The notes under the pieces: model-generated
Told to the model about the DNA's origin: nothing
Databases searched by the model: none
The model's input: the letters and a program-made list of their open reading frames with translations, nothing else
Source of the DNA: Haliotis rufescens
Lineage: Eukaryota
NCBI RefSeq assembly: GCF_023055435.1
Contig: NW_025964354.1
Span: 2,108,001 to 2,172,000, forward strand
Length of the DNA stretch: 64,000 bases
Direction of reading: 5' to 3'
Shown here: in pieces, positions 1,993 through 63,343 of the stretch
Layout: each line of letters begins with the position of its first letter
Numbering within the stretch: position 1 is the first letter of the stretch
Program-made: the position numbers and the translations under genes

Positions 1993-2591
1993 CTATATAT
2001 ATATAATAATAAACATTCTATGCCATAATGACATTGGACCTTTCTAGAAACAATATACATGCTAATCTCATGACTACTCTCTTAAGTACAACCCCTCATC
2101 ATTAGCTCTCAAAACGCGATGGAAGCCGTACGACACAACGAGGTACATTCTCATTGAAACAGATGTTCCAGTCAGCAAAGCAATCCTCAATATCATTAAT
2201 AAGATTCCCACTAACATGGAATACATGTGTTATTCATTAACCTGGCCTAAACAAAGAACAGGTAAGAGAGAATACCATGAATAACACCGTTGTCAACTAA
2301 ACTGTATAACACAAACAAGAAAAGGTTTTGTGCAAATTCTATTGAATTTTTATATAAAAATAAAATACAACTTGAAAACATCCATAAAGTCCTCAATGTT
2401 GCAGATAAACAGTGTTTGCATGTATAGCAGGACCCACCTGCACAGAGCATGCTTACATGAGATTGTGCAGACTCGTCCGTAATATTTCACGTGCTCATTC
2501 TCAAATTGCACTTACATAGGTTTTAAACTTATTTAAAACGTTAGGGTGTCTGTGTTGAATATGTTGAAAAGTCTAGTTTTTCTTGTCGCAG

Positions 2592-5500
2592 ATGGTGAGA
2601 GTGTCATCGTTAGAGAGACGGAAACGGCCTGATTCAGGTGGCAGGTGCCACGAGGGGCATCTGTCATTGCAATGTATGTACTAAACCCAAATGGAACCGG
2701 CGTCCTACTCGCTAACACAGCAAACCGGCACCTTGTTCTTCCTTTATATGAAGCCCGTGTCAACTTCAGTGGGAACTTGTCGGCAGGGCTTGTGATGTTT
2801 GATATGAGCAATGTCAGCGGATCTGATGCTGGGACGTACACGTGTGGTAACGGAGGAGTGACTCGTATCATTCCGAACTGTGGACAGACGCTCATTGTTC
2901 TAGGTGAGTGTATATCAATGCAATTCAACTTTTAGCCCAATATTTCCATCCTCAGGTGCTGAGAGTCAAACTACAGCCATCGCCTCCCCTGGAGATAACA
3001 GTACAATCAGCTTCATCATCCCACAAGGTGGTCTTGGGACAGGATCGTCATTCTACTTTGTTACACCAAGTGGTGTGATAGCCTTTATTGTATTCTCATC
3101 GGGAACATTTGTCGCCACAAATCCTTACAAAGATAGAGTAGTGTTTGAAGGCAGCTATTCCTCTAGGAACATCACATTTGTGCTGCAGAATATATCAAGA
3201 TCGGATGCTGGGCAGTATACATGTGGCATTGGGGGTGCTTCTAGTCTGATAGAGGGCTGTGGCTTGAAACTTATTGTCATTGGTATGTCGTTTGCAATTT
3301 GATAAGTGAATATATCTTCGTGTTATTAATCCATGATCATCAGCGAGGTAAAGGACAAATGCACAGGCATAATTCCACACACAACATCAATGTGACAGCA
3401 TCAAATCATATATAGTTATTCAGAGAGTATTATTATAAAGAATCCAATTCTTGACGAAAGCCCAAAATGAAATAAGGATGAACCGTCATCACGTGTGGCA
3501 TGGCTCATTATATTTAATCACCTGATGGCTTGAGTACAACTGGCTTGCCTGGCACAGACTCGAGTATTCACAGGCCGACTTGATATACCTTGAAACAACA
3601 TTTACTCAGTCATTCTCATATTTAAAAAATAGAGCACCGACAACCATTCCAAGTCGCCGTGAATACCTGTAAGATTGTTGAAGCGGCGTTTGGCAATATT
3701 CTCTCATCATTCCAGGTGAGCCGACCAAGCCAGTCATATCACTGCAATCTACTCCCGTGGTTGGCAGGAACGTCACGATGACGTGCTCATCTACATCTAC
3801 AACACTGCCTGCAGATCATGGACTGACCTTCACCTACACCTGGAAGATAGATGGTCTCAACATTACCTCGCCAGATGGCGCTAGTCTAACAGTTCCGGTT
3901 GAAAGTCATGACCAACCAGGTGTCACCTGTCACGTGACAGAGGATAAGGGCCTGGGAAGAGACAGTGACGTTCTGATGTTAACTCCTGACTGTAAGTATA
4001 TAACTATAGATTAACTGATACTGATCTGCATGTGGTGGTGGTACTTCTTGTTAGACAGTGTAACCACAGTGGAATGTCTACAACTTTGAACTGCATACAA
4101 ATGGTGTACTGCCAAGGTTACCATCACTCTGAACAATATTTCGATTGAATTAAGCTGAACAAAGATGGATTATACTTTTCCTAACTTGCCCGTACAGCAC
4201 AAAGTGGAAGGTTCATAATGTATATATAAATACTCAGTAGTGAAATATTACTTGCTAAACAAAAGTAATAAATATCCTTAATGATGAATATGCTATTTGG
4301 AAGGCACATGTCAAGTTACTTTTTATAAATAGACTACTGCACGTGTGTGTTGGGAAAGTCTTGCTTGGTTTGTAATATATATAAAACAAGGCTTTGTGTT
4401 TGAATTGATCATAGTGTCACACTATATATCCTTGATGATACGAATGAAAAGTTACGAAGAAGGTATTCAGTATTGAGTTTTATTTCTAATTATTTGACTT
4501 TACAATCGAATTGCAATAACTTTTGTTTACATAACTAAAAGCCAAGTTTTGGCGTTTGAATTGATTCGTAGCACTGATCTTACAGATCCTCCGTACAATG
4601 CCAGCATCTCGTCAACATCTGTACAAGTCAAGGAGGCTGACGTCGTACCCCAGGTCACGTGTGTCAGCACGTGTCGACCTGCATGCTCACATTCCTGGAA
4701 ACAAGGATCTCAGACAGTCGTGACTGGACAGGTCCTCACTCTTGGAGCAGCAAACAAGACCATGGCTGGCAGCTACGTGTGCAAGGCGACAAACGTATAT
4801 GGCACAATACAGAGTCCTGCTGTTTCACTTGATGTCCAATGTGCGTATGGCTGTATTTCATGTTAGAGTAAACCATGCTTGTGATAAGAGGCGACGAACG
4901 ATATCATGAGCATCAATTCACGGCAATTGTGATAACGTGAGTGAGTGAGTAAGTGAGTGTGGTTTTACGCCGCTTTTAGCAATATTCCAGCAATATCACG
5001 ACGGGGGACACCAGAAATGGGCTTCACACATTGTACCCATGTCGGGAATCGAACCCGGGTCTTTGGTGTGACCACTAGGCTACCCCACCGCCCCCAAATT
5101 TACTTGAGACATCATATATATTTACAGAGATGGTTTGCATATTTCAGCGTCTTCACTGTTGTATAGTCCTATTTTATCTAAAATGAAGTGAAGATACTTA
5201 TCACAATGTTTCTTAGTTTGCATAATTAAGACAAGTCGCATTACAACTAAGACGGAAGGTATAATTTAAATCCGCCTTTCACTCTTCAGATAAACCATCT
5301 GCAGTTTTAATGGCTAATGGTCAGTCCAATGCAACTGAAGTTGACGAAAGAGGCTCTGTGGTTCTGTCATGTGCAGTAGACAGTAATCCTTTCTCCAGCA
5401 TATCCATCATGAACGGCACTATTCGACTGAACCATGTGACAGAGGCAGCCGACGTCAGCTTCAACTGGACTGGAGCTGATTGTCTTGACGGCAGCGTCTA

Positions 5501-13850: not shown

Positions 13851-14309
13851 GGTGCGGTCGGGTAGACTTGTGGTTAAAGCGTTCGTTCGTCACGCCAAAG
13901 TGTGAGTGAGTGAGTGAGTGAGTTGAGTTTAACGCCGCTTTTAACAGTATTCCAGTTATATCGCAGCATGTCAGCTTAATGTGGGAGGAAAGCCCGAAGT
14001 GATGCAGGTCTCAGACATTTACCACTTCGGTGAAACCCACGAGCACTGGTATGGTGCTGACAAACCTAGAAACATAATTGGGGCGAACCGGGATTGAAAC
14101 CCACAATCATAGGTTTCTTGCGTGCCCAAGGGACGCAACTCTGCACAGCGAATCGCGGCGCCTTAGACAACTAGGCCACCCGTGCCCCGTCACGCCAAAG
14201 ACCCGGGTTCGATTCCCAACATGGGTACAATGTGTGAAGCTCAGTTCTGGTGTTCCCGGCCATGAAAGTTCTGGAATATTGCTAAAAGTGGCATAAAACC
14301 ATACACACT
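13851..14309 (+). mobile_element. SINE A interrupted by an antisense SINE B (13901-14188)
   Basis: 12-bp TSD GTCACGCCAAAG at 13889-13900 and 14189-14200; the uninterrupted SINE A is at 1031-1194. Confidence 0.85.
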
Positions 14310-16644
14310 ACAACAACAACAACATACTAATATTGAATTAATCACATTTAGAAATAACACAGTATAGCACATGTCACAGTAGTATGACAGATACAAAAAA
14401 AGGGAGATAAGCGATACCTTACTTCTCACATCTAACAAGAAATAAATAGTATTACATTGAAGACAACCACTTTCATATGTTCAATAGACGTTTTTTGCTA
14501 GAACTTTAGTTCATATATAATACTATCCATTCTATGCCATAATAACATTGGACTTTTTTACAAACAATATATATGCTAATCTCATGACCACTCTCTTTAG
14601 TACCTCTCATCTTTAGCTCAACATCATTAGTACGACACCACGAGGTACATTCTCGTTGAGGCAGATGATCCAATCAGCAAACCAAAATCCTCGATATCAT
14701 AAATAAGATTCCCACTCACATGAAATACATGTGCTATTCATTAACCTGGCCCAAACGAAGAACAGGTAAGAGAGAATACCATGAACAATACCTTTGTTAA
14801 TAAAACTGTATAACACAAACAGGAAACGGTTTTGTGCAAATTCTATTGAATTTATATATACAAAATAAAATACAACTTGAAAACATCCATAAATTCCTCA
14901 CTGTTGCAGATAACCAGTGTTTGCATGTATAGCAGTACCAAATAACTGACTCTATGTTAAAGTGGTCGCTGAGATTGTGCAGGCTCATTCGCGATATTTC
15001 ACATTCTCAATTTGCACTTACACAGGTTTTATACGTATTTGAAACGTTAGGGTATTTGTGTTCAATATGTTGAAAAGTCGACTTTTTCTAGTCACAGATG
15101 GTGAGAGTGTCATCGTTAGAGAGACGGAAACGGCCAGATTCAGGTGGCAGGTGCCACGAGGGACATCTGTAACTGCAATGTATGTGCTAAACCCAAATGG
15201 GACCGGCGTCCTCCTCGCTAACACAGCAAACCGGCACCTTGTTCTTCCTTCACACTTCAGTGGGAACTTGTCGGCGGGGCTTGTGTCCTTTGATATGAAC
15301 AATGTCAGCAGATCTGATGCTGGGACTTACACTTGTGGTAACGGAGGACTGAGTGATATCATTCCGAACTGTGGACAGACGCTCGTTGTTCTAGGTGAGT
15401 GTATATCAATGCAATTCGATTTTTAGCCCTACATTTCCATCCTCAGATGCTGAGAGTCAGACTACAGCCATCGCCTACCCTGGAGATAACAGTACAGTCA
15501 GCTTCCTCATCCCACAAGGTGGTCTTGGGACAGGATCTTCATTCTACTTTGTTACACCAAGTGGTGTGATAGCCTTTATTCTTACAGCATCGGACGTATT
15601 CATAGCCACAGATCCATATAAAGATAGAGTAATTTTTGAAGGCAGCTATTCCTCGAGGAACATCACATTTGTGCTGAAGAACATTACAAGATCGGATGCA
15701 GGACATTATAATTGTAGCACTGCGGGGTCTACCAGTCATATACCGAACTGTGGCTTGAAGCTTATAGTCATCGGTATGTTGTTTACATTTGATAAATCAA
15801 CCATGTGCATACGATATGCATGTGTATCAGGAGCCAACTCAAATCAGAATAGAAAGGATTGTGTGTCTTCCTCACCTGACTCTAATAATATATAAAATGA
15901 CATAATATATACAAATAAACGACTTATCATAGCAAAATTTGTGTGTCTTGTAAAAGCGTGCCAACAATCATTTCAGGTGAGCCAACCAAGCCAGTCATAT
16001 CACTTCAATCTACTCCCGTGGTTGGCAGGAACGTCACAATGACGTGCTCATCTACATCTACAACACTGCCTGCAGATCATGGACTGACCTTCACCTACAC
16101 CTGGAAGATAGATGGTGTCAACATTAACTCGCCAGGTGGCGCTAGTCTAACAGTTCTGGTTGAGAGTCATGACCCACAAGATATCACCTGCCACGTGACA
16201 GAGGATGAGGGCCTGGGGGGAGATAGCGACGTTCTGATGATAACTCCTGACTGTAGGTATATAACTATAGATTACCAGATACACATCGGTATGTGGTGGT
16301 ACTTGTTGTTAGACAGTGTAACCACAGTGGAATGTCTACAACTTTGAACTGCATACAAATGGTGTAATGCCAAGGTTACCGTCACTCTGAACACTATTCC
16401 GATTGAATTAAACTGAACAAAGATAGATTATACTTTTCCTAACTTGCCTGTACAGCACAAAGTGGAAGGTTCATAATGTATATATAAATACTCAATAGTG
16501 TAATATTACTTGCTGAACAAAATACCCTGTAATGATAAATATGCTATTTGAAAGCACTACTGTACGTGTGTATTGGGAAAGTGTTGCTTGGTTTGTAATA
16601 TATATTATAAAAAAAGGCTTTGAGTTTGAATTGATCATAGTATA

Positions 16645-25107: not shown

Positions 25108-27167
25108 CAGGTGGGTGAGATTTTATTTATCATCCAAAATCATTCTTCCAACTTTTACATTTTGTAAACAGTAATAATTAACTACTGTCTTGAGTGTTGA
25201 AAATACAGTTAACCATCTTCAGCAGCAGAGAGTATTGATGTCATTTGATTGTGATGTCCATGCAACTGAAGATTTTACAATAGTCTGTTTTGAAAAATGT
25301 ACATACAAGATCAAATTTTCACTCAACCCTCCTTGGTTAAACAATCATTTGATCAACATGAAACAAACTAATGTGTCATGATTTATGTTTATTTGAGTCG
25401 TATCAAGACACTTTTGCTGAACAATAACTATTTCAGTGAACATTGTCATACAATGAAGCAAATAACTTCAACTGTGAGTATTGAACTTTCCACAATAATG
25501 TTTGCGCTCGTTGAAAGAGAGGATCAAGTGTATATAACACCAAATTAAAAATGCATTATCGGCCATACCACGTATGCTAACTGCGTCCGATGACTTTAAT
25601 GGTAGTGTAGCCGGGTGGTGGTGCTAACTCTGAATGAGTTATAGCCACATAAGTACCACCCACTTATAACCCCCTAGTATTCATTCTATACATAAATACA
25701 TATATACATACATATATACATGTTCATCTATTTATCACCATCACATCATTCTGTGTTCATTATATGTTGTCTTTGTCTGCAGTTGAATGTCAGCCAACTA
25801 ACATCAACCCTGATACCCTTATGCAGCCTCTGTGATTTCTCCAGCTTCACCTGGACTTGTTATGCAATGTTTCATCAAAGTGCTATTATTTACAAAGGAA
25901 ACGTTAAGAGGTTGTGATCAGTGAATTAGCTTGTGTTCCCAATATCGAAGTATGGAACATTCTGATAATAGACTACATGTATAACACGATTGTGTATAAG
26001 ACTTGCTATTCAGTCAGTGACAAGGAGTTACATGTAACGTGATCAGCGTGACGCCAGAGAGTATTCGTCAAGTTCCCAGTGAGACAAATTCATTAATCGG
26101 TACAAAGCAATGAATAGTGCAGCAACTTGACATATATACCTAATGATTGCCGTCAAATAGTTATCGCCTTGTAGCAGACTGTATAAATTAAATTTGTCAA
26201 ACTATCCTTTCGTCTACGTTCAAGTATGGCCCATGCGAGAACATTATTTTCTAAGTATCTAAGTATGAGAATGTTCGTGACCCAAATTGACTCTTTCACC
26301 CTTTTGTACTCTTATTAGCTACATCCCAGAAGAAGGAATTGCTCATAGCTGGGAAATATTTGCTGAAAACCTAAAAAAATATGCATTTTGTTAATTTATA
26401 CATTTTAGTCTTAATTATGCATTTAGTGCTTTTCATTAGTCCCACTTGTTAAAATGAAATGAACAAAGTTCACATCAATATTAACTCATCTGGTAACATT
26501 CATGGTTATGAATTGTTTGACAGGCATTACTTAGAAGCTGACGGATGACAAAGTAGACACAATTTGTTAAGGCGGCGTTTCGGTATAGATCCTTGTTTCG
26601 TTTTCAAGTTTAAATGTTTGCCTAATGTCTCATATTATGCATATTCACAGTCAGAAAGAGCCCTTATTCCACCTTATGCGTTGATGCCATTGCAAAGACT
26701 ATTGTGATCATGAAGTCATATTGTCAAGTGACCCGGTCAATTAAGACAATGAACAGAGTTACGTCCCATAGTCGTCCCAGGATCCTAAATTCTCTCTGAT
26801 TACGATTATTGTTCTGTCAGCACAACATCCTTGCTCGTTGGTTTCACAACAATCAATCTTTGCTCTTTCTCGCTCATTAAGCTGACACAGTGTAATACAA
26901 CCTGAATACTGCTTAAAGCCCCTTTAAACCAACTCTCTAACACCAAGGCACAATAATGTACACAACGACCGCCTTAACATGACATAGATATTAATGCGTG
27001 GTTGACGGGTATATATGTGTTGTTGCTTTGTGTCACAGTAACACTTACCCCTGTACACACCACCCGGAAGTTGAAAGGCTCACCTGAAGTAGATATACCC
27101 GACTACATACCAACATGTGTATATGTCAGTTCAGGGAAGTCTACAAATAGTCTGTGCAAAATCTTTC

Positions 27168-27225
27168 ATGGAGATCAAAATACGCCATTTGTGGATTATT
27201 ATCCTGATCTCATGTGGTGCCAGAT
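27168..27225 (+). CDS. Copy 3 exon 1: signal peptide MEIKIRHLWIIILISCGAR
   Basis: Basic n-region, hydrophobic core LWIIILISC, phase-1 GTAAGT donor. Same peptide at 12537-12594 and 43151-43208. Confidence 0.85.
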
Positions 27226-30200
27226 GTAAGTATATGTGAATTATATACGTGAAAATAGTACAGTTGAACTGCTTCACTGCACACAGCCCAGCACAGCGAA
27301 CATTCTCGTGTGTGCTGTTCAGCAGAACGTACATTCTCGTGTGCGCTGTACAGTAGAACGTACATACTCGTGTATGCCATTCTTTGGAATGAATCAGGTT
27401 CCGATCAATCTCTCAATAAAGATATTCTTTCAGTCTTGAGATCGTTAAACTCTAGCAATAACCTGACTAATGTAATTATACACGCTGTGCACAGGACTTA
27501 ACAACAAGCAGGCCTCCATGCGTTAACCCTCTAACGCGCAGTACGTGATGTCCTCCGATTACATGCTTAGTCATACATGTGGCTGTTCACAAGGGATTTG
27601 TTCTAAACGGTTGGACGATGTGTACATATAACATGTAGGTAATCGGAGGTGTCGACGTTCCTCTGTCCCGTATTCACCAGTGTTATCACCGGCCTATGCC
27701 ACTCACTGTGCGATCACTAGCGGAATAACGCACCCATTGTATGTGTAATTGAATGCTAAGCCATGTATGTAAAGATGCATAGAAATAAGAGGAAGTTAAT
27801 CCCCGGGCAGTGACACCACATCAGCCCCTCTGTGTACAGGTGATATCGCTTTAGTATTATTTGTCCAGCAATCATTCACCAGTTATGTATATATATAGCA
27901 TTCAAACAAGCACAATGACGCCACCACGGGGGTTTTGACAGCAATGTAGGTCACAGGTACAAGCGACGTCCTGACAATTTCCAACCCCCAGTCCTGAAAC
28001 ACACCACCAAGACGTCAGAGGATACCTTATGTCGAGTTAAAAGTACACGTTTAGGGTTACGGCATTTTACAACAAATAGGAGAGGGGACATAGGGCTTAT
28101 CGTCACGTTCAAGTAACTGCAGTTATATAGCGTTATACATGCATGTGTTCGTGAGCGTTTGTGTGTGTTGTGCGGTGGGTGGGTGGGTGTGTATTTGTGA
28201 CGTCACACTGTTGTCCTTGCAGTTGTTGATTCTGCGCCAGGAGATACTAGCCATACGGAACGTGCATTTTAAAACTATATGTCATTATGCAAAATAAAGA
28301 GAAATTTGGGCCTCATTCCTTTTTCCGGAATCAACAGATTTTCATGATATTTCGATTCTGTAGCATATTTAAACGTTTTTTGATATGACGCTGTAGCAAA
28401 TAGAATTTGAATGGATGTGACATCTAAAACACCGTGATTAGGCAAGAATGCTCAACTCGCTGAAGGGTTGGGGGGGGGGGGGGGGGGGGGGGGGAGGGAG
28501 GGTGCGGTCGGGTAGACTTGTGGTTAAAGCGTTCGTTCGTCACGCCAAAGTGTGAGTGAGTGAGTGAGTGAGTGAGTGAGTTGAGTTTAACGCCGCTTTT
28601 AACAGTATTCCAGTTATATCACAGCGTGTCAGCTTAATGTGGGAGGAAAGCCCGAAGTGATGCAGGTCTCAGACATTTACCACTTCGGTGAAACCCACGA
28701 GCACTGGTATGGTGCTGACAAACCTAGAAACATAATCGGGGCGAACCGGGATTGGAACCCACAATCATAGGTTTCTTGCGTGCCCAAGGGACGCAACTCT
28801 GCACAGCGAATCGCGGCGCCTTAGACGACTAGGCCACCCGTGCCCCGTCACGCCAAAGACCCGGGTTCGATTCCCAACATGGGTACAATGTGTGAAGCTC
28901 AGTTTTGGTGTTCCCGGCCATGAAAGTTCTGGAATATTGCTAAAAGTGGCATAAAACCATACACACTACAACAACAACAACATACTCATATTGAATTAAT
29001 CACATTTAGAAATAACACAGTATAGCACATGTCACAGTAGTATGACAGATACAAAAAAAGGGAGATAAGCGATACCTTACTTCTCACATCTAACAAGAAA
29101 TAAATAGTATTACATTGAAGACAACCACTTTCATATGTTCAATAGACGTTTTTGGCTAGAACTTTAGTTCATATATACTACTATCCATTCTATGCCATAA
29201 TAACATTGAACTTTTTTACAAACAATATATATGCTAATCTCATGTCCACTCTCTTTAGTACAACCTCTCATCTTTAGCTCGACATCATTAGTACGACACC
29301 ACGAGGTACATTCTCGTTGAGGCAGATGATCCAATCAGCAAACCAAAATCCTCAATATCATAAATAAGATTCACACTAACATGAAATACATGTGCTATTC
29401 ATTAACCTGGCCTAAACGAAGAACAGGTAAGAGAGAATACCATGTACAATACCTTTGTTAACAAAACTGTATAACACAAACAGGAAACGGTTTTGTGCAA
29501 ATTCTATTGAATTTATATATACAAAATAAAATACAACTTGAAAACATCCATAAATTCCTCACTGTTGCAGATAACCAGTGTTTGCATGTATAGCAGTACC
29601 AAATAACTGACTCTATGTTAAAGTGGTCGCTGAGATTGTGCAGGCTCATTCGCGATATTTCACATTCTCAATTTGCACTTACACAGGTTTTATACGTATT
29701 TGAAACGTTAGGGTATTTGTGTTCAATATGTTGAAAAGTCGACTTTTTCTAGTCACAGATGGTGAGAGTGTCATCGTTAGAGAGACGGAAACGGCCAGAT
29801 TCAGGTGGCAGGTGCCACGAGGGACATCTGTCCTTGCAATGTATGTGCTGAACCAAAATGGAACCGGCGTCCTCCTCGCTAACACAGCAAACCGGCACCT
29901 TGTTGCTCCTTCATATGAAGCCCGTGTCAACTTCAGTGGGAACTTGTCGGCGGGGCTTGTATCCTTTGATATGAGCAATGTCAGCAGATCTGATGCTGGG
30001 ACTAACACGTGTGGTAACGGAGGGCTGAGTGATATCATTCCGAACTGTGGACAGACGCTCATTGTTCTAGGTGAGTGTATATCAATGCAATTCGATTTTT
30101 AGCCCTACATTTCCATCCTCAGATGCTGAGAGTCAGACTACAGCCATCGCCTCCCCTGGAGATAACAGTAGAGTCAGCTTCCTCATCCCACAAGGTGGTC

Positions 30201-33200
30201 TTGGGACCGGATCTTCATTCTACTTTGTTACACCAAGTGGTGTGATAGCCTTTATTCTTACAGCATCGGACGTATTCATAGCCACAGATCCATATAAAGA
30301 TAGAGTAATTTTTGAAGGCAGCTATTCCTCGAGGAACATCACATTTGTGCTGGAGAACATTACAAGATCGGATGCAGGACATTATAATTGTAGCAATGCA
30401 GGTTCTACCAATCAGATACCGAACTGTGGCTTGAAGCTTATAGTCATCGGTATGTTGTTTACATTTGATAAATCAATACATGTTGATATTCATAACCCTT
30501 TGTACAGTTACATCCTGTTCCCACAACCATGTGCATACACGTTGAACAGCTGTGGGATATGAATGTGTATCACACTGTGTCTGTAGCAGGAGCCATCTCA
30601 AATCAGAATAGAAAGTATTGTGTGTCTTCCTCACCTGACTCGAATAATATATAAAATGACATAATATAAACAAATAAACGACTTATCATAGCAAATTGTA
30701 TGCTAGATTTACACTCCTTGTCACAAAATGTGTGTGTCTTGTAAAAGCGTGCCAACAATCATTTCAGGGCTCCTTTGTGACAGTAATAACATTATACAAT
30801 AAAGAAGGATTTGAGGGACATGGCAAGGGCTATATGATAGTGAGTACAATGCAATGTTGCGTACAAGCCATCATGACAGATTAAACGACCTATCACAGTA
30901 GATTGTATACTACATTGTACATTCCTTCTCCAAGAATGTGTGTTTCTTGTAAAAGAGTGCCAACAATCATTCCAGGTGAGCCGACCAAGCCAGTCATATC
31001 ACTTCAATCTACTCCCGTGGTTGGCAGGAACGTCACGATGACGTGCTCATCTACATCTACAACACTACCTGCAGATCATGGACTGACCTTCACCTACACC
31101 TGGAAGATAGATGGTGTCAACATTAACTTGCCAGGTGGCGCTAGTCTAACAGTTCTGGTTGAGAGTCATGACCCACAAGGTATCACCTGCCACGTGACAG
31201 AGGATGAGGGCCTGGGGGGAGATAGCGACGTTCTGATGATAACTCCTGACTGTAAGTATATAGCTATAGATTACCAGATACACATCTGTATGTGGTGCAA
31301 CTGTAACCACATTGGAATGTCTACAACTTTGAACTGCATACAAATGGTGTAATACCAAGGTTACCGTCACGATATTCCGATTGAATTAAACTGAACAAAG
31401 ATAGATTATACTTTTCCTAACTTGCCTGTACAGCACAAAGTGGAAGGTTCATAATGTATATATAAATACTCAATAGTGTAATATTACTTGCTGAACAAAA
31501 TACCCTGTAATGATAAATACGATATTTGGAAGGCACTACTGTAGGTGTGTGTTGGGAAAGAGTTGCTTGGTTTGTAATATATATTATAAAACAAGGCTTT
31601 GAGTTTGAATTGATCATAGTATACACATGCACAACAGTTAAGCGCCACCCACCATATTTGTGAGCTGTTTCTTTCTAATATAACGAGATGTATGTACGAG
31701 TGTTATAAGCCGTATATGTAAACCTCATGTGATGCAAAAGTTGTCCCAAAGCAAGTTTTTCTTGTGTTCACATCAGGTGTCACATAGACACCCTAGGGAG
31801 TGCAGAGTCTATTGCAAGACAGAAACGTCAGTAACGTGTGTGTGATGGCATTGTTAGCAATTCAGGTTTCCACGAATTGTCCAGCGGAAGTTTGCAGCCG
31901 AAGGAAACACAACCCCCTGCCACATGCTAAGGTCTTCTGGATGTTACTTGGTGCAAAACGAGCATTACGTTGCCTCCAAACACGTATTCGACCATCAACA
32001 GTTCGAAGCAACATTCGACACTCGTCAGACCAATGGATCCTTCTCCAGTTGGCCAAGTTCCATCGACTATGGGCACGACACCATATCAGACGATTCCGCA
32101 TGTGCCTCTCAGTCAGTTGAGGACGTTTTACTGGTCTTATGGCGTTATAACCAGCCGCTCTTAGGCGACGCCTTACGGTCATCGTCGAGAGTCTCTGATG
32201 GGTAATTCACTGCAGTCTTAAATCTGTTCAAGTGGCAAATGGATTTCGTCTGACTATCCTGAAAAGACGTCTATCCTCTCTGTTAGAGGTCTTTCTTGGA
32301 CTAAGAGACCTATGCCTGTCATTGACATCATTGGTTTGACCATGTTTGACAATCAAACGAGTGATAACACTGATGACGACCCATTTGTCTTGCAGTGGCC
32401 CTGCATGACATGCCAGCAATTTTCATGCCTATCACTTGCCATCTTTCAGCGTTCGTTTCATTTCCTTGTGGTATCTGGACAGATGTTGGTTCCTGAAACT
32501 ATGGAGGCCTAATTCAATCATCTTTCGTATTTCTGATTCCCACACGTGAAATCAAGAGACTATGAATATGGTGGCGCTTAATTTTTGTGCATGTGTATAT
32601 AACACTATATATATTTATATTCTAAAACGACATATGTCTTTCTCCTTGATGATACGAATGGAACATTTAGAAGAACGTATTCAGTATTGAGTTATATTTC
32701 TAATTATTTGACTTTACAATCGAATTGCAATTACTTTCGTTTATGTAACTAAAAACCAAGTTTGAATTGATTCCAAGCACTGATCTTACAGATCCTCCGT
32801 ACAATGCCAGCATCTCGCCAGCATCTGTACAAGTCAAGGAGACTGACGTCGTACCCCAGGTCACGTGTGTCAGCACGTGTCGACCTGCATGCTCATATTC
32901 CTGGAAACAAGGATCTCAGACAGTCGTGACTGGACAGGTGCTCAGTCTTGGTGCAGCAAACAGGACCATGGCTGGCAGCTACGTGTGCACGGCGACTAAC
33001 GTATATGGCATAACACAGAGTCCTGCTGTTTCACTTGATGTCCAATGTGCGTAGGGCTGCATTTCATGTTAGAGTAAACCATGCTTGTGATAAGAGGCGA
33101 CGAACGGGATCTGGCCCTCTGACTTGCGTAGATCGATGATCATGATTTCAATCACTGGATTGTCTGGTCCAGAAACGATTCAACAACAACTGGCGTTAAA

Positions 33201-36200
33201 CAACAAACAAATCATGTATAATAAAATAGAGTCTGGATCAGACAATATATTAACTGACATCATGAGCATCAATTTACGGCAATTGTGATAACATGACAAA
33301 CAACCAAAGATATAACATCACCACGCCTGATCACACAATCCCTCTGGTCGCCTTTTACGATCCATTGTAAACCGGAAACTTCACGACGTGCTGAAAATGA
33401 TTATTTAAGTGAATGAAGCATGATGACATGCTGGAACTAGTTTGTATGAAATATGGAATATAAACCACAGGTGGTCAAATTTACTTGAGTGAGTGATAAT
33501 GGTTTTACGCCGCTTTGAGCAATATTCCAGCAATATCATGGCGAGGGACAGCAGAAATGAGCTTCACACCTTGTACCCATGTGGGGAATCGAACCCGCGT
33601 CTTCGGCGTGACGAGCGAACGCTTTAACCACTAGGCTACCCCACCAACCCCAAACTTACTTGATACATCATAAATATTTACAGAGATGGTTTGCATATTT
33701 CAGCGTCTTCACTGTTGTATTGTCATATTTTATCTAAAATGAAGTGAAGATACATATCACAATGTTTCTTAGTTTGCATAATTTAGACGAGTCGCATTAC
33801 AACTAAGACGGAAGGACAATGTAAAGGTATAATTTAAATCCTCCTTTCACTCTTCAGATAAACCATCTGCAGTTTTAATGGCTAATGGTCAGTCCAATGC
33901 AGCTGCAGTTGACGAAAGAGGCTCTGTTGTTCTGTCATGCGCAGTAGACAGTAATCCTTTCTCCAGCATTTCCATCATGAACGGCACTATTCGACTGAAC
34001 CACGTGACAGAGGCAGCCGGCGCCAGCTTCAACTGGACTGGAGCGGATTGTCTTGACGGCAGCGTCTACACGTGTCTTGCAAGGAACATAGTTGGTGAAA
34101 CGACAGCATCAGTAACAGTAAATATAAAATGTAGGTACCTTGATGAGACTCTAAAGGTATCTGGTTTAATAACCAAGATATTCACACATCTATTGATATA
34201 TTCTACAGCCACGTATGCTACCTGGAAGAAGTATGTCCAATATTGAGCGTAAATTTTATGGGAAATTAGAAGGTGATATGTTGACTCATATCCTCATACT
34301 GACTTGTCAAGAAGCAATGTATTTGACAAAAAGGACGACTTTTCGATAAAGAAACTGCATTGATGTATAAAACTATAAAGTCACTGTCATTGCAATAAAA
34401 TACTTGACAAAGAAATATTTTCAATGCAGGGAGAAACATGTGAAAAGAATTACTTTTTACATTAAAGGTTCCCCGCGGCTCAATTTCCAATACCCCACAG
34501 GGAGGGACGTGTATGTTGAAATAGGGCAGCCAATCAGATTACAGGTGTACATCCTGGCCTTTCCACAACCGACCTTCACCTGGTTTAAACAGAATGGAGG
34601 TAGTGCAGAACCTGTCGACCTGTCAAAATGGCGCCAGTATGACGAGGCCATGACGTCATATATTGTCACAGATATTGTTGAAGAGACAGATTATGGAGTG
34701 TATTATGTAAACGTCACAAACACACTTGGAAGATTCCGAATGCAATTTCAACTTGGAAAGAAAGGTGGGTTTGAACTAAATAATTGAACTAACTGAAACA
34801 AAATATATGTTAGACTGAAATAACACAAACACGCACCATTATAGTAATTCATTATCATGGGATCATGTTTCCTTATTCAATCTATGGTATGTTCTTCATC
34901 ACTTACAGCACCACTTTCTGTACCGGAGAACTTCCAGTGTCAAAACAAAGCCGGCAGCTACATCCTTCAGTGGACACCGGGTGGTGATGATGAGACAAGA
35001 GGCGTAGGGTTCCTGGTGGAACAAAGACTGCCACAGGCTAACTGGACCACAGTCTCCGCCACTGTTGCAAGTGATGGTGTGAGGAGACAGGTGGAGCTAC
35101 CAGAGGCTGGAGACAGGACCGTCTTCTTCAGGCTCTATGCTGCAGAGGGCACTGCAAGGACGTCACCAGTGACAGCGTCATGTACATCATTCACTGTTGC
35201 AGTCGACAATGGTATGTCAGACCGATACTATATTTCACTGTTCATTGTATGAATATTTTTGTGCTCACTTTTATAACTTTCTAACTTTTTTTTCAATAAA
35301 CATATCCTTAATGTTTCAGAGATCGTAGATAGATGATTATCAAACTTCATTACGCTTTAATCGTTGTTGAAGTTTTCATTTCCTTCCATGGTTTGATGAT
35401 TCAATGACGCAGGTACAATATGATGCACGTCAAGATCAGATAGACAAAGTGAAAACATTTTATTGCTCTTACGTGGGCGTTCACCATTCAATTTCCTATG
35501 TGTGTGATATTCAAATACTATTACTTACGATAGGCTCCGATATCATGCTTCTAAAATTTGACTTTGTTTTGAAAGATGAAGCTATCTAAACTAACATCCC
35601 TTTCTCTGTGTTCAGGTGAGCTATCGTTCGGGGCAGGTGTGGGCGTTGGCCTTGCTGTTGCAGTAGCTGCTGCAGCAGTGTGCCTGGCTGTAGTTTGTAT
35701 CTGCAGAAAGAAGCGACTGTCACTAAGGAATGGTATGTATACATGGCTTATCAGGATAGGAGATACACGTTTCCCTGAGACAAAACACTAGCTCAGTTTA
35801 TATTGCCACATGACATGGATGACAGTTCACTCAGACGACTCTCGAAATATGAGCGAACACACAACATGAACAAAACTATGTTGCTGATGTTGCTTAACAA
35901 TGCTGTTGAAAGTTGTCTGAGGAAGCGGATCAGTAATGTTCGTGGCAGGTTCATTCTAAAGCTGTACATAATGTGAACATTCGTCTAAATCTACCACATC
36001 AACACTAAAGCTATAAACGATGCATTGCAATAGAAGGGTAGGAACATAAGACTTTATAACATATAACTTTAACTGAGAAAGAGATACCAGTTGGACATAG
36101 TCAGACACCTAATCATGATACCATGTTTAACATGTTTGTGATATTTCAAATAGGATACCAGGGTACCAGCCCGATATTGGTATCGGCTTGTCAATATGAC

Positions 36201-38556
36201 ATAACACTTGCATTATTAGTGAGTGAGTGGACAGGTTCTTTAAGACGCATCAGCAATATACCAGGTATTTGCGACAAAGTATGGACAATAAGTGGACCAC
36301 TTCGTATAAAGTTCAACCAATTTCATCACTCCCCTAACCGCAGTCATGTGGTGTTCAAGACGTACAAACTGAAAAGGAATGTACTACACCAGAACTTGTG
36401 TGAGATGGACTTTACCATAACAGGATGTACACCATGACAGGACACAGATTTATACAGTTTGCACATCGGTTTTTCGATTCATACCTCAATGAACCGGAAA
36501 AAATACAGTCAATGTTTGAATGCACACAAGATACCGAACTATCGGCTCACATTACTTTTATACTGCCAACCAAGAATATTCTTCAAGATCTATGCACCAA
36601 CAACAAATGAGGATTGGATGGTCAACTGAACACAAGATATCTTTGGAGAAATAGCTGGAAGGTCATAAGGAAGAGGTTTGAAGATGTCTGAAGCTGTGAC
36701 GTTGTGGAATGTTTTTTCAGGCAACTTCTGTGGTTAAGATAACATCCATACAGCATTTCTCATGGGCGAGACTTGCATCAGTAAAATCAGTCCTCGCTTA
36801 GAGTTAACAACTGTGTCTGCACACATTGGGCAACTCATGTAGAAACAACTTGACACCAATAGTGATAGTGTCGCTTGGGTTTCTATCCATATAAAAATGG
36901 GTCACCATATGCTCATCTAATTTCACTGACGTGGTTTGATGGGATATTCCATTAAAACAATTATTTACTTGTGTTAAATTAAATGCACCTTATTGTAATA
37001 TAATGTTGGATCGAAATGAAATATGTCAGTTAAGGACAAGTTCATTCTTTTATTTGACAAAATAAGCATTGTACACATACAATACTAGTTTTGTCGCTGA
37101 CCAGTTGAAATGCACATATACATGTATCTAAGTCTGTATTTCATTACTCAAACGATTACTTTACAATGTACTAATTATACCTATATTTTGAGTAGGCCTA
37201 TATATTTCATCCTTTTGTAAGGAGTGGTTAGAATGATATGAAACAGAAAATGTAAACATGTACTGCTCCACACTATTAATACACTATTGATGACTGGGAT
37301 GATTTGATCACACAATAATTGTTACGAACATGACACGGGTACAAGCTGTTATAGTGTGGGAGATCTGTGTTTCCAGATCCGTCGAGGCAGAAGGAAGAGG
37401 AATCTGTGTAAGTACTTTTGGCTCTTGCTATACTTAAAATAAGTGAGTACTTAAACATGTTGATGCTGAATTGAAAGCGGAACAGATGTGTAGTTCATTG
37501 TACCCTGTTATTACTGTATCAGTGTAGACTATATCATTTGTGATTAAACGTAATTCGCAGAGGAAAGTTAATTCATGTTATATGGACACACACAATAGAA
37601 TGTCCTGCAATGTGACGCTACTGTTTCTATACAGATATCATGAGGTAGCTGCATCTACCGTGACAACTCAGCACAATCGCCAGCAACATCGTCAGTCAGG
37701 TAAAACAAGGATTATGGACTGGACATAAGTCACATTCTTGTTTACTGGACCCGAAAAAACACAATATTGACTGTGGAAGAAGACCGCGGTCGATGTTGTT
37801 TTGTTCGGGTTCATAAAACATGTAGTGGCATAAAATATAATTGTTTATTATATAAGAAAGCGACAAAGGCACAATCAAAATAGGCTTTTGGTCGCTTCTG
37901 TCGAATGACACGTGACCGCTCCTTGGCCAATGAAATGGCTTAATTTCAAGGACATAAAGAAAGGAGGTATATATCCAATCCTTGTCAACCAATGGTGTAT
38001 TGTTGTCCTTATAATTTGGATTTCACGAAAAAAGTTTGTAAAAGTTTATCTCATTATAATTATTTGTATTTGTGATGCATATCTTCCTTGGTGTCTGATA
38101 TTTCCAGTTAGCATACTTATTTAAAAACTGAGGGTTCACAAGTTCCAGTTACCACAGAGAATCTGACTCGACTGTCAAAGATACTTATTGATGTATGGTT
38201 TCAAATACAAGGAGCTGCTGACAACGCGGATGTTTCCACCTGGTTATCGTCGATTGTTTCAGTTACATGCATATCGTATGTCCTTGTTTCATGAAATATT
38301 GAGATCACAAGGAGGATAAACACCATTATTGTTTATTGCGAGCTCAATCTTGTCACAAATAGGTTTACTGTACATGGTTTGTACTTTGGGCGACCACAGG
38401 ATGATGTGTAATAATACCATTACAGGTGCGGGGACATCTGGCAGCACTTACGACGCCCTCACATCTGACAGGGACACGCCAACAGAAGCACCAGCTTACG
38501 AGAAACTAGAGAAACAGTATGTGAACATGGCGGTGTCTGCTTATGATGAGACCTAA
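27168..38556 (+). CDS. IgSF receptor paralogue 3, complete open gene (SP-V1-V2-4xIg-FnIII-TM-Tyr-motif tail; 814 aa with both V exons, 710 aa with V2 only, 705 aa with V1 only)
   Basis: 12 exons, all open and in phase, total 2445 nt. The architecture resembles proteins loosely labelled nephrin-, CD22- or CEACAM-like in invertebrates; no orthologue can be named from sequence alone. Confidence 0.9.
28501..28967 (+). mobile_element. SINE A with nested antisense SINE B (28551-28846)
   Basis: Paralogous to 13851-14309; preceded by a 25-G run (28470-28494) versus 14 G at 13839-13852. Confidence 0.85.
29759..30070 (+). CDS. Copy 3 exon V1: atypical V-set Ig domain
   Basis: YEARVNFSG...SFDMSNVSRSDAGTNTC-x11-CGQTLIVL; 312 nt, phase 1-1. 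Confidence 0.8.
30123..30449 (+). CDS. Copy 3 exon V2: atypical V-set Ig domain
   Basis: YKDRVIFEG...ITFVLENITRSDAGHYNC-x11-CGLKLIVI; 327 nt, phase 1-1. Confidence 0.88.
30976..31251 (+). CDS. Copy 3 exon Ig3 (C2-like)
   Basis: EPTKPVISL..GRNVTMTCSS..YTWKIDG..ITCHVTE; 276 nt. Confidence 0.88.
31624..32595 (-). mobile_element. Tc1 element, internally deleted, no SINE
   Basis: Same TIRs and site as 16645-18224; retains TVRRRLRAAGY..RPVKRPQLT..WSDEC. Confidence 0.9.
32792..33046 (+). CDS. Copy 3 exon Ig4 (C2/I-like)
   Basis: VTCVSTCRPACSYSW...MAGSYVCTATN; 255 nt. Confidence 0.88.
33490..33651 (-). mobile_element. SINE family A
   Basis: Paralogous to 19098-19258. Confidence 0.85.
33858..34130 (+). 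CDS. Copy 3 exon Ig5 (I/C2-like)
   Basis: SVVLSCAVDSNP...ADCLDGSVYTCLARNIVG; 273 nt. Confidence 0.88.
34468..34764 (+). CDS. Copy 3 exon Ig6 (I-like, no canonical Cys pair)
   Basis: AFPQPTFTWFK...TDYGVYYVNVTNTLG; 297 nt. Confidence 0.88.
34909..35211 (+). CDS. Copy 3 exon FnIII-like
   Basis: PLSVPENFQC..YILQWTPGGD..FLVEQR..W..VFFRLYAAE; 303 nt. Confidence 0.8.
35616..35732 (+). CDS. Copy 3 transmembrane exon
   Basis: FGAGVGVGLAVAVAAAAVCLAVVCIC followed by RKKR; GxxxG motifs; 117 nt. Confidence 0.9.
36370..36620 (+). mobile_element. Very degenerate LINE (RTE-like) endonuclease remnant in the long TM-cyt1 intron
   Basis: Broken-frame fragments LCEM, GHRFI, HIGF and IYAPTT fall in the order expected for an APE endonuclease; paralogue at ~52190-52430. 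Confidence 0.35.
37377..37407 (+). CDS. Copy 3 cytoplasmic micro-exon 1 (DPSRQKEEESV)
   Basis: 31 nt, ttccag acceptor and gtaagt donor, phase 1-2, conserved in all four copies. Confidence 0.75.
37635..37699 (+). CDS. Copy 3 cytoplasmic exon 2 (YHEVAASTVTTQHNRQQHRQS)
   Basis: 65 nt, phase 2-1; restores frame with micro-exon 1. Confidence 0.75.
38426..38556 (+). CDS. Copy 3 terminal exon with YDAL, YEKL and YVNM motifs
   Basis: GAGTSGSTYDALTSDRDTPTEAPAYEKLEKQYVNMAVSAYDET-stop; nearly identical in all four copies. Confidence 0.85.
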
Positions 38557-41635: not shown

Positions 41636-41910
41636 TGAGTGAGTTGGGTTTAACGCCGCTTTTAACATTATTCCAGTTATATCACGGCGTGTCAGCTTAA
41701 TGTGGGAGGAAAGCCCGAAGTGATGCAGATATCTGACGTTTACCACTTCGGTGAAACCCACGAGCACGGGTATGTTGCTGACAAACCTAGAAACATAATC
41801 GGGGCGAACCGGGATTCGAACCCACAATCATAGGTTTCTGGCGTGGCCAAGGGATGCAACTCTGCACAGCGAATCGCGGCGCCTTAGACGACTGAGCCAC
41901 CCATGCCCCC
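41636..41910 (-). mobile_element. SINE family B, full length (tRNA-Leu-like head, V-domain-like body, tail shared with SINE A)
   Basis: 14-bp TSD CATTCTGATAATAG at 41622-41635 and 41911-41924; empty sites near 11327 and 25958. Head reads GGTGGCTCAGTCGTCTAAGGCGC...GTGGGTTCGAATCCC. Confidence 0.9.
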
Positions 41911-62937: not shown

Positions 62938-63343
62938 CTTTTCTCAATCTCACCCCTCTCCAGCGCACCACCTGTCCTCTCCATACTTTTCCCAGTCTCA
63001 CCCTTCTCCAGCGCACCAACTGTCCTCTCCACACTTTTCTCAATCTTACCCTTCTCCACCACACCACCTGTCCTCTCCACACTTTTCTCAGTCTCACCCT
63101 TCTCCACCACACCAACTGTCCTCTCCACACTTTTCTCAATCTTACCCTTCTCCACCACACCACCTGTCCTCTCCACACTTTTCTCAATCTCACCCTTCTC
63201 CAGCACACCACCTGTCCTCTCCACACTTTTCTCAATCTCACCCTTTTCCACCACACCACCTGTCCTCTCCACACTTTTCTCAAACTCACCCTTCTCCAGC
63301 ACACCATCTGTCCTCTCCACACTTTTCTGAACCTCACCCTTCT
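62938..63343. repeat. 48-bp minisatellite, ~8.5 units
   Basis: Unit TTCTCAATCTCACCCTTCTCCAGCACACCACCTGTCCTCTCCACACTT; minus strand reads EKGEIEKSVERTGGVV repeats. Confidence 0.95.

What the first reader, a model, noticed from the sequence alone, without database searches (positions are those of the whole stretch)
27168..30449. V1 and V2 look like alternative (possibly mutually exclusive) N-terminal exons separated by only 52 nt
Seen: the leader ends in phase 1 (..SCGAR+T). Joined to V1 it reads ..GAR-YGES-VIV; joined to V2 it reads ..GAR-YAES-QTT (CAES in copy 1). Both exons therefore supply a small-x-small motif that completes the signal-peptidase site, as expected if each can directly follow the leader. 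The V1-V2 intron is exactly 52 nt in all four copies (2904-2955, 15395-15446, 30071-30122, 45453-45504), and both exons are phase 1-1. Known: a very short donor-to-branchpoint distance can sterically force mutually exclusive splicing. Inference: each gene may choose between two ligand-binding tips, a minimal Dscam-like switch.
Basis: partly seen in the sequence, partly recalled or inferred. Interest (0 to 1): 0.8.

Follow-up and report, generated by a model that had tools for sequence, protein, structure and literature searches.

The report
Abalone receptor swaps two V-domain exons
In a tandem family of red-abalone cell-surface immunoglobulin-type receptor genes, two related exons that each encode the outermost domain lie only about 52 bases apart, and public gene models and transcript contigs use one or the other, never both; this is a known kind of splicing switch, listed in RefSeq's automatic annotation, with no paper found in one search.

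Summary
The sequence observation holds. Four window copies of an IgSF receptor gene (eight in the Haliotis rufescens array) carry a leader exon ending in phase 1 and two paralogous V-set exons (29% identical, both phase 1-1). A GT..AG intron of exactly 52 nt separates them in the window; older copies upstream have 49 and 56 nt. One correction: transcripts and RefSeq use a V1 acceptor 6 nt upstream (29753), so leader-V1 reads GAR-FTDGES, not GAR-YGES.

RefSeq gives paired isoforms for this gene, XP_046378067.2 (leader-V1-Ig3) and XP_046378066.2 (leader-V2-Ig3). The same pairs exist for four sister loci and for H. rubra. No model contains both V exons. Transcript contigs show leader-V1 and V1-Ig3 joints, and by inference leader-V2.

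The steric cause is inferred, not shown:
- The predicted donor-to-branch-point distance is about 30 nt.
- The gene's other introns are 144-2527 nt.
- About 80 sampled housekeeping exon gaps are all about 185 nt or more.
- A related gene with a 715-nt intron between tandem V exons joins both.
- NMD, U12 incompatibility and RNA docking structures find no support.

This is a new member of a known kind (short-intron mutually exclusive exons). It is in RefSeq; one literature search found no paper on it.

The parts
27123..27225 (+). Leader (signal-peptide) exon of gene copy g3. The conserved ATG is at 27168 and RefSeq starts at an upstream in-frame ATG at 27123. The exon ends in phase 1 and its donor is GTAAGT.
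   Evidence: P0164 and P0165 map exactly
27226..29752 (+). Leader-V1 intron (2527 nt). It contains a tRNA-like SINE at about 28500-28970.
29753..30070 (+). V1 exon (318 nt, phase 1-1), a V-set-like Ig domain. The acceptor TAG| at 29752/29753 is the one used in transcripts.
   Evidence: (records 9, 23 and 24 start at 29753)
30071..30122 (+). 52-nt GT..AG intron between V1 and V2. A conserved TTTTA(G/A) at intron positions 27-32 is the likely branch site, about 30 nt from the donor and about 21 nt from the acceptor.
30123..30449 (+). V2 exon (327 nt, phase 1-1), a V-set-like Ig domain and paralog of V1.
30450..30975 (+). V2-Ig3 intron (526 nt). It varies from about 204 to 684 nt among paralogs.
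30976..31251 (+). Ig3 exon, the common acceptor for either V exon (..IVL-G-EPTK or ..IVI-G-EPTK).
   Evidence: (X8 record 19)
32792..38556 (+). Rest of g3: Ig4, Ig5, Ig6, an FN3-like exon, the TM exon, two micro-exons (33 and 66 nt) and the tyrosine-motif tail. All of this is shared by both isoforms.
2586..3282 (+). Copy g1: V1 (upstream acceptor lost, TGA at 2630-2632), the 52-nt intron 2904-2955, and an intact V2 at 2956-3282.
15092..15773 (+). Copy g2: V1 with a 15-nt in-frame deletion, the 52-nt intron 15395-15446, and an intact V2.
   Evidence: RefSeq pair P0159/P0163
45179..45831 (+). Copy g4: V1 with a 44-nt frameshifting deletion, the 52-nt intron 45453-45504, and an intact V2.
   Evidence: RefSeq P0152 (V2-only) and P0162 (broken V1 -> Ig3)

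Best explanation
V1 and V2 are a two-member cluster of mutually exclusive exons. Each encodes a complete N-terminal V-set domain of a lineage-specific abalone IgSF transmembrane receptor, named 'hemicentin-2-like' by RefSeq in Haliotis rufescens.

Shown:
- The leader is spliced either to V1, which then goes to Ig3 with V2 left in the intron, or to V2, which then goes to Ig3 with V1 left in the intron.
- No model or contig joins V1 to V2.

Inferred:
- The V1-V2 intron (49-56 nt, donor-to-branch-point about 30 nt) is too short for U1 at the V1 donor and U2 at the V2 branch site to assemble together. That intron therefore cannot be removed, and choosing the acceptor for the leader fixes the isoform.
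- Both exons are multiples of 3 and all sites are U2-type GT-AG, so neither NMD nor U2/U12 incompatibility can enforce exclusivity.
- Each gene thus offers two alternative outer domains on one common stalk and signalling tail.
- Within the array, copies that have lost one of the two exons (g1 and g4 have lost V1; gA has a damaged V2) can still make a protein from the other.
For: 1. RefSeq isoform pairs from one locus differ only by V1 versus V2. For g3 these are P0165 and P0164, both mapping 100% to window 27123-38556. The same pairs exist for g2 (P0159/P0163), g4 (P0162/P0152), gB (P0151 against P0166 and P0167), gC (P0006/P0168) and H. rubra (P0156/P0170).
2. No V1+V2 protein appears among all 90%-identity clusters of the family. 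The search window was 397-1263 aa, so an approximately 830-aa form would have been in range.
3. Transcript contigs: X3 record 9 joins 27225 to 29753. X8 record 19 joins V1 to 30974/30976, and X8 has no V2 coverage. X3 record 11 starts V2 at 30123 at contig position 139, and a contig of the same depth (5.89) lies on the leader but not on the 3' end of V1.
4. V1 (318 nt) and V2 (327 nt) are both phase 1-1, 29% identical, and both fold as VH-like V-set domains (pLDDT 81; TM 0.7-0.78).
5. The intron is very short in all seven V-bearing copies (49, 52 x5, 56 nt), while the neighbouring V2-Ig3 intron varies from about 204 to 684 nt. The other introns of g3 are 144-2527 nt. About 80 exon gaps in CCT and proteasome genes of this genome are all about 185 nt or more.
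6. Natural control: in a related H. rufescens gene (P0174), tandem V exons separated by a 715-nt intron are joined in the RefSeq model.
7. Published criteria: donor-to-branch-point under 50 bp counts as potential steric interference in human MXE clusters (PMC5740500). C. elegans MXE pairs exist with introns too short to be excised (PMC4165533).
Against: - RefSeq XP proteins are translated from the genome, and their isoforms rest on RNA-seq alignments I could not inspect. Among paralogs 96-99% identical, reads can be assigned to the wrong copy.
- Only a handful of junction-bearing contigs were visible, because the read laying tables were swamped by a SINE. Contigs also drop rare variants, so rare V1-V2 double inclusion is not excluded.
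- The minimum spliceable intron of Haliotis is unknown. Human introns of 56 nt can be spliced (abstract of 10.1101/784868) and nematodes splice introns of about 40 nt.
- The branch point is predicted from a weak consensus only.
- In run X3 the leader-V1 and leader-V2 contigs come from different paralogs (MEIK versus MEIQ leaders).
- Double inclusion would be in frame, and tandem V-V proteins exist in the wider family (P0001, P0004, P0174). Nothing at the protein level forbids it.
Confidence: 0.62

Rival explanations
1. V use is fixed per paralog rather than switched per transcript. Each gene copy habitually uses only one of its two V exons while the other is on its way to decay. The paired isoforms that RefSeq gives to single loci would then come from RNA-seq reads mis-assigned among near-identical copies.
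For: - Several copies have one dead V exon: g1 has a TGA in V1, g4 a 44-nt deletion in V1, and gA a damaged V2.
- In run X3 the leader-V1 contig has a MEIK-type leader and the leader-V2 contig a MEIQ-type (gB-like) leader, so they come from different paralogs (table 3).
- All four H. cracherodii models are V2-only.
- Some RefSeq models are cross-paralog chimeras, joining gC to g1 and gB to gX.
Against: - g3, gB and gC keep both exons open, with intact splice sites and dN/dS below 1.
- H. rubra has a V1/V2 isoform pair from one gene with consecutive accessions.
- Even under this view, an intact neighbouring V exon is skipped. The no-V1-V2-joining rule still needs a cause.
Confidence: 0.17
2. 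V1 and V2 are independent cassette exons whose inclusion is set by regulated splice-site competition (trans-acting factors or RNA structure). On this reading the short intron is incidental and spliceable, and V1+V2 or V-less forms exist at low or tissue-specific levels.
For: - Both exons are symmetric (phase 1-1), so every combination is in frame.
- A V-less model exists in H. asinina (P0158), and a V-less paralog, gX, sits in the array.
- Tandem V-V proteins occur in related genes (P0001, P0004, P0174).
- Introns of about 50-56 nt are spliceable in some animals.
Against: - No V1-V2 junction appears in any RefSeq model or any listed contig.
- No significant local structure or long complementary boxes surround the exons: only short imperfect inverted repeats, and the fold z-score is -0.99.
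- The intron stays at 49-56 nt across all copies while its neighbours vary several-fold.
Confidence: 0.18
3. V1 and V2 are constitutive tandem exons giving a two-V receptor. On this reading the single-V forms are annotation or assembly artefacts.
For: This is the default expectation for adjacent in-frame Ig exons with canonical GT..AG sites.
Against: - Thirteen RefSeq models in H. rufescens and H. rubra, plus four V2-only H. cracherodii and three H. asinina (V1-only or V-less), carry at most one V exon; none has both.
- Contig X8 record 19 joins V1 directly to Ig3 at the canonical sites.
- Copies with a dead V1 would be null under this reading, yet the rest of their genes is intact and modelled.
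Confidence: 0.03

Closest known systems
Short-intron ('steric interference') mutually exclusive exon pairs: alpha-tropomyosin exons 2/3 in mammals; C. elegans let-2 exons 9/10 and egl-15 (FGFR) exons 5A/5B
   Same: - Two adjacent, homologous, similar-sized exons.
- The intron between them is shorter than the spliceosome is thought to need, so they cannot be joined to each other.
- Exon lengths are multiples of 3, so NMD cannot be the safeguard. This matches the five C. elegans clusters described in PMC4165533. The human criterion of under 50 bp from donor to branch point comes from PMC5740500.
   Different: - Here the swapped unit is a whole N-terminal V-set domain that directly follows the signal peptide.
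- The gene is a young, tandemly amplified, Haliotis-restricted family rather than an ancient conserved gene.
- The species' minimum intron size and the branch point are not known, so the steric block is inferred.
- The tropomyosin details are from my own knowledge, not from a tool.
Dscam1 exon 4/6/9 clusters (arthropods)
   Same: An IgSF receptor whose extracellular Ig domains are diversified by mutually exclusive exons that are phase-symmetric and homologous.
   Different: - Dscam has 12-48 variants per cluster, chosen through docking-site/selector RNA pairing (my own knowledge).
- Here there are only two variants, no detectable docking or selector complementarity, and a mini-intron instead.
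- There is no sequence relationship beyond the Ig fold.
FGFR2 IIIb/IIIc exon pair (vertebrates)
   Same: A two-way exclusive exon choice in an Ig domain of a receptor that changes ligand specificity (my own knowledge).
   Different: - FGFR swaps half of Ig3, is regulated by tissue-specific factors across a long intron, and is ancient.
- Ligand specificity of the abalone V1 and V2 domains is untested.
RefSeq gene models 'hemicentin-2-like isoform X1/X2' of Haliotis rufescens (XP_046378066.2, XP_046378067.2) and sister loci
   Same: These are the very gene and isoforms. They map 100% to the window.
   Different: They are automatic annotation only. The names (hemicentin, contactin, NCAM, CEACAM5, peroxidasin) are best-hit labels, not orthology. 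A full-text search found no paper on the family or its splicing.

Membership tests
Mutually exclusive exon (MXE) cluster | Adjacent exons that are homologous, of similar length and in the same phase | tested here: met
   V1 is 318 nt and V2 is 327 nt, both phase 1-1. They are 29% identical over full length, E 4e-17.
Mutually exclusive exon (MXE) cluster | Mature transcripts carry exactly one exon of the cluster | tested here: met
   Paired V1-only and V2-only RefSeq isoforms exist at five H. rufescens loci and one H. rubra locus, and none carries both. Contigs show leader-V1 and V1-Ig3, and by inference leader-V2. Caveat: the frequency of double inclusion or double skipping was not measured from raw reads. 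One V-less model exists in H. asinina (P0158).
Mutually exclusive exon (MXE) cluster | The variants encode the same structural unit of the protein | tested here: met
   AlphaFold2 models of both exons (pLDDT 80.9 and 81.5) are nine-strand sandwiches matching antibody VH/VHH domains, TM 0.65-0.78.
Steric-interference (short intron) mechanism of exclusivity | The donor-to-branch-point distance, or the whole intron, is below what the species' spliceosome can use | tested here: inconclusive
   The intron is 49-56 nt, with a conserved TTTTA(G/A) about 30 nt from the donor. That is below the 50-bp human criterion. It is far below all about 90 other introns sampled in this genome, which are 144 nt or more. 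The true Haliotis minimum and the real branch point are unknown.
Steric-interference (short intron) mechanism of exclusivity | Lengthening the intron allows both exons to be joined | not testable with these tools
   Only a natural comparison is available: related tandem V exons with a 715-nt intron are joined in RefSeq model P0174.
NMD-enforced MXE | Exon lengths are not divisible by 3, so double inclusion or skipping shifts the frame | tested here: not met
   318 and 327 nt are both divisible by 3.
U2/U12 splice-site incompatibility MXE | One intron of the cluster has U12-type sites | tested here: not met
   The donors are GTAAGT (leader), GTGAGT (V1) and GTATGT (V2). The acceptors are pyrimidine-rich and end in AG. 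None has the U12 TATCCTT-type donor. The U12 consensus is from my own knowledge.
Docking-site/selector RNA-pairing MXE (Dscam type) | Conserved complementary intronic boxes upstream of each variant pair with one docking site | tested here: inconclusive
   Only short imperfect inverted repeats of 10-22 nt (73-91% complementary) lie in 29400-31000. The local fold is not better than shuffles, z = -0.99. No cross-species alignment was possible.
Immunoglobulin V-set domain (Pfam PF07686) | Sequence match above the Pfam gathering score | tested here: not met
   V1 scores 19.0 bits and V2 19.1 bits against a cut-off of 26.
Immunoglobulin V-set domain (Pfam PF07686) | V-type beta-sandwich fold | tested here: met
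   Foldseek top hits are all antibody or nanobody variable domains, probability 1.00.
Immunoglobulin V-set domain (Pfam PF07686) | Canonical B-strand to F-strand disulfide | tested here: not met
   There is no Cys in the B-strand region. The invariant cysteines are the F-strand Cys of the D-A-G-x-Y-x-C motif and a second Cys 11 residues later in C-G.

The most novel reading that the evidence does not exclude
The abalone array would be a germline two-state recognition switch. Every intact gene could present either of two fast-diverging V domains on one signalling stalk, hard-wired by a sub-minimal intron. The choice would be regulated, for example by tissue or infection. The array would also catch the switch dissolving into single-V genes, through complementary loss of V1 (g1, g4) or V2 (gA). 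That route would also explain the large neighbouring families of single-V genes of V1-type and V2-type on another contig.
Probability: 0.25. Interest if true: 0.62.

Novelty: new member of a known kind. Interest (0 to 1): 0.45.

Why it matters
Molluscs lack antibodies, and how they widen their recognition repertoire is an open question. This locus is a clean, small, experimentally tractable case in which alternative splicing swaps the entire membrane-distal V domain of a receptor with tyrosine-motif signalling tails. The swap occurs in a gene family that is also expanding by tandem duplication.

The locus also offers a natural test bed for the steric-interference model outside vertebrates and nematodes. 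It provides a 49-56-nt series among paralogs and a 715-nt control in the same genome.

The importance is limited. The mechanism class is textbook, there are only two variants per gene, the isoforms already sit in RefSeq, and nothing is yet known about ligands or regulation.

Tried and rejected
- **Short protein fragments:** a word search with the V1 exon peptide alone, meant to fish short predicted fragments spanning junctions, gave no hits in the 57-180 aa range.
- **Read laying:** Its SINE (28500-28970) filled the joint and loose-end tables with noise, so junctions had to be read from the contig-piece table and from depth bookkeeping. No second call was available.
- **Piece ends at 30068:** I first took pieces ending at 30068 in X1 and X3 as further V1->Ig3 evidence. 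I rejected that, because both V2 and Ig3 are preceded by AG, so such ends do not discriminate.
- **Contig depths:** V2 is lower than V1 and Ig3 in all runs, which looks like exclusivity. The tool warns that depths of contigs cannot rank parts of a gene, so I did not use this as evidence.
- **The look-up of encoding contigs:** I could not fetch H. rubra, H. cracherodii or H. asinina genomic DNA to measure the V1-V2 intron in other species.
- **Literature and findings searches:** searches for a mollusc minimum intron length, and the scan's earlier findings, gave nothing usable.
- **Genome-wide intron minimum:** I could only sample it through exon-level Pfam hits in CCT, proteasome and I-set genes. 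Those gaps are approximate to a few codons.
- **Docking/selector structures:** nothing was found beyond chance-level repeats.
- **SignalP:** not available, so the signal-peptide claim was judged by rule of thumb only.
- Full-length queries were RefSeq proteins returned by the tools.

Full report
**What is in the window**

The 64-kb window has no N. It holds four head-to-tail copies, 12.5-15.8 kb apart and 96-99% identical, of one multi-exon gene. It lies at G000:C576:2108001-2172000 of a 1.33-Gb genome. Proteins that map 100% to the window are named by RefSeq as Haliotis rufescens, so this is red abalone.

I fetched the 60 kb upstream and mapped the exon peptides. The array has eight copies:
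- gA, gB, gX and gC lie upstream of the window.
- g1 to g4 lie in the window. The leader of g1 sits just before base 1.

Its exons, fixed by exact mapping of two RefSeq proteins, are:
- leader, ending at 27225
- V1, 29753-30070
- V2, 30123-30449
- Ig3, 30976-31251
- Ig4, Ig5 and Ig6, an FN3-like exon and a transmembrane exon
- two micro-exons and a tail with several tyrosine motifs

I did not build or search any joined exon sequence myself. Full-length queries were database proteins that the tools returned.

**Checking the observation**

These points are as described:
- The leader ATG is at 27168 and the exon ends in phase 1 at 27225.
- GT..AG introns of exactly 52 nt lie at the four stated places.
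- V2 and its reading GAR-YAES are correct, as is CAES in copy 1.
- V1 and V2 are true paralogs: 29% identity end to end, E 4e-17.
- Both score weakly as V-set in Pfam, 19 bits against a cut-off of 26.
- Both fold as antibody-VH-like domains (pLDDT 81; TM 0.65-0.78).
- They lack the usual B-strand cysteine and keep two invariant cysteines 11 residues apart near the F-G loop.

Two corrections are needed.

Three transcript contigs begin V1 at 29753 (records 9, 23, 24), and every RefSeq model reads ..SCGAR-FTD-GES (STD in gC). The 'small-x-small supplied by both exons' argument therefore does not hold as stated. By the (-3,-1) rule, a cleavage site S-C-G| or C-G-A| lies inside the leader anyway. 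That is my reasoning; SignalP could not be run.

Second, identical length in four copies is not independent evidence, because the copies are young. The older copies have 49 nt (gA), 52 nt (gB) and 56 nt (gC). What is conserved is extreme shortness.

**Are the exons used one at a time?**

A profile of V1 and V2 searched against 1.84 billion representative proteins found the family. A word search with its representative then listed all 90%-identity clusters. Cluster members with consecutive accessions are isoforms of single genes.

| Locus | V1-only model | V2-only model |
|---|---|---|
| g3 | XP_046378067.2 (P0165), leader-FTD-V1-GEPTK.. | XP_046378066.2 (P0164), leader-Y-V2-GEPTK.. |
| g2 | P0159 | P0163 |
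| g4 | P0162 (broken V1 -> Ig3) | P0152 |
| gB | P0151 | P0166, P0167 |
| gC | P0006 | P0168 |
| H. rubra | P0156 | P0170 |

The two g3 models are otherwise identical, and both map exactly to the window.

In other species, the H. cracherodii models are V2-only. The H. asinina models are V1-only or V-less. No model contains both exons. An approximately 830-aa V1+V2 form would have fallen inside the length range searched.

Independent of RefSeq, I laid transcript-like contigs of four public runs on 27100-33099.
- One contig joins the leader to V1 (27225|29753).
- One joins V1 to Ig3 at the canonical sites with V2 skipped (X8 record 19), and X8 has no V2 coverage at all.
- One starts V2 exactly at 30123 at contig position 139. 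A contig of identical depth (5.89) lies on the leader, while the contigs over the 3' end of V1 in that run have depths 6.1 and 5.18. I therefore read it as leader->V2.
- No listed contig crosses 30070|30123.

**Limits of that evidence**

- XP sequences are translated from the genome. I could not see the read support behind the isoforms.
- With paralogs this similar, reads can be mis-assigned. Some models are cross-paralog chimeras, with gC 5' exons joined to g1 3' exons and gB joined to gX tail exons.
- The read laying joint tables were swamped by a SINE at 28500-28970, and contigs drop rare variants. Rare double inclusion cannot be excluded.
- In run X3 the leader-V1 and leader-V2 contigs come from different paralogs: K versus Q at codon 4, the 27177 A>C difference. 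That Q matches gB.

I therefore keep as a rival the idea that each paralog habitually uses one V.

**Why exclusive?**

The classical safeguards can be tested on the sequence.
- NMD cannot act, because 318 and 327 nt are both multiples of 3.
- All splice sites are ordinary U2-type GT-AG.
- I found no complementary boxes or stable local structure. There are only short imperfect inverted repeats, and the fold z-score is -0.99.

That leaves the short intron. Across all seven V-bearing copies, the first 31 nt of the intron are well conserved. They end in TTTTA(G/A), the best branch-site candidate. It lies about 30 nt from the donor and 18-24 nt from the acceptor.

Published work counts a donor-to-branch distance under 50 bp as potential steric interference in human MXE clusters (PMC5740500). 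It also describes C. elegans exclusive pairs whose intervening intron is too short to be excised (PMC4165533).

In this genome the 52-nt intron is a strong outlier:
- The other ten introns of g3 are 144-2527 nt.
- The V2-Ig3 intron varies from about 204 to 684 nt among copies.
- About 80 gaps between consecutive exon-level matches in CCT and proteasome genes are all about 185 nt or more. These gaps are approximate to a few codons.

There is also a natural control. A related H. rufescens gene (P0174, 'titin-like') has two tandem V exons of the same type and phase separated by a 715-nt intron, and its RefSeq model joins them.

This is correlation, not proof. The abalone minimum intron is unknown, and introns of 40-56 nt are spliced in some animals.

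**Evolutionary context**

- V1 and V2 are the most divergent exons among paralogs. Mean dN is 0.10-0.11, against 0.015-0.055 for the other exons. Overall dN/dS is 0.46-0.68, so there is no gene-wide signal of positive selection.
- Several copies have lost one V exon but keep the rest. g1 has a TGA in V1 and has lost the upstream acceptor. g4 has a 44-nt frameshifting deletion in V1. g2 has a 15-nt in-frame deletion in V1. gA has deletions that remove the end of V2. gX has no V exons. This pattern is what one expects if either exon is dispensable for making a protein.
- Another contig (C479) carries at least 22 single-V exons of either V1-type (51-56% identity) or V2-type (41-49%). C90 carries dozens of more distant ones.
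- The nearest hits of the domain family outside Haliotis are in Bulinus truncatus.

**Comparison with known systems and verdict**

By anatomy this is a two-member mutually exclusive exon cluster of the short-intron class. The tropomyosin 2/3, let-2 9/10 and egl-15 5A/5B pairs are the closest parallels. Functionally it recalls FGFR IIIb/IIIc and, loosely, Dscam. It shows none of Dscam's docking/selector features and has only two variants.

The isoforms are already in RefSeq as automatic predictions. A full-text search found no paper on this family or its splicing in abalone.

I rate it a new member of a known kind. The steric cause is plausible, at roughly 60%, but untested.

Noticed in passing
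window 28500-28970 (also 13902-14201, 41623-41922, 43915-44214): A tRNA-like SINE flanked by a poly-G run and a (GTGA)n microsatellite sits in the leader-V1 intron. Transcript-like contigs of all four runs pile on it at summed depths of 4e5-1.3e6, with many rearranged joints. It is therefore a very abundant, transcribed repeat family in several abalone data sets.
   Followed up: no
window 31500-32700 (Ig3-Ig4 intron of g3): Contigs up to 1324 nt long, with depth 40-190 (10-20 times that of the exons), lie here in all four runs, with indels relative to the window (records 7, 13, 20, 27). This is probably an expressed repeat or a separate transcript inside the intron. Its nature was not determined.
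   Followed up: no
window 29744-29760 and equivalents: V1 has tandem acceptors 6 nt apart (TAG|TCACAG|AT). Transcripts use the upstream one. In copy g1 the upstream AG is mutated (TTG), leaving only the downstream one.
   Followed up: partly
G000:C576:2079514-2084737 (gX) and 2057566-2063259 (gA), upstream of the window: These are two degenerate array members. gX has a leader followed directly by a frameshifted Ig3, and no V1, V2, Ig4 or Ig5. gA lacks a recognisable leader, Ig4 and Ig5, and has a damaged V2.
   Followed up: partly
gC/g1 and gB/gX (G000:C576:2068004-2116456): Some RefSeq models are cross-paralog. P0168 and P0006 join the 5' exons of gC to the 3' exons of g1 across about 19 kb, and P0167 ends in the last two exons of gX. 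This is either read-through splicing between neighbouring copies or an artefact of read multimapping.
   Followed up: no
window exons of g1-g4 and upstream copies: Divergence among paralogs falls from the N-terminal to the membrane-proximal exons. dN is 0.11 for V1, 0.10 for V2, 0.055 for Ig3, 0.037 for Ig4, 0.019 for Ig5 and 0.015 for Ig6; FN3 breaks the trend at 0.037. dS is also higher in the V exons (0.17-0.23 against 0.05-0.11). This suggests either older V exons or homogenisation of the 3' part by gene conversion.
   Followed up: partly
G000:C479:2.0-3.03 Mb; G000:C90:3.3-6.5 Mb and 26.4-27.3 Mb: There are large Haliotis-specific expansions of related V-like exons. On C479 at least 22 single-V loci are either V1-type or V2-type. 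On C90 dozens of exons have a fixed 118-aa open frame, many as tandem pairs about 190-300 nt apart.
   Followed up: no
window 62888-63415: A minisatellite with a 48-nt unit (about 11 units) lies near the end of the window, in a region with strong negative GC skew.
   Followed up: no
window 37377-37409, 37637-37702, 38429-38556: The cytoplasmic part is built from a 33-nt and a 66-nt micro-exon plus a tail exon with YDAL, YEKL and YVNM motifs. Both V isoforms share it. This is the subject of another first-reader note.
   Followed up: no
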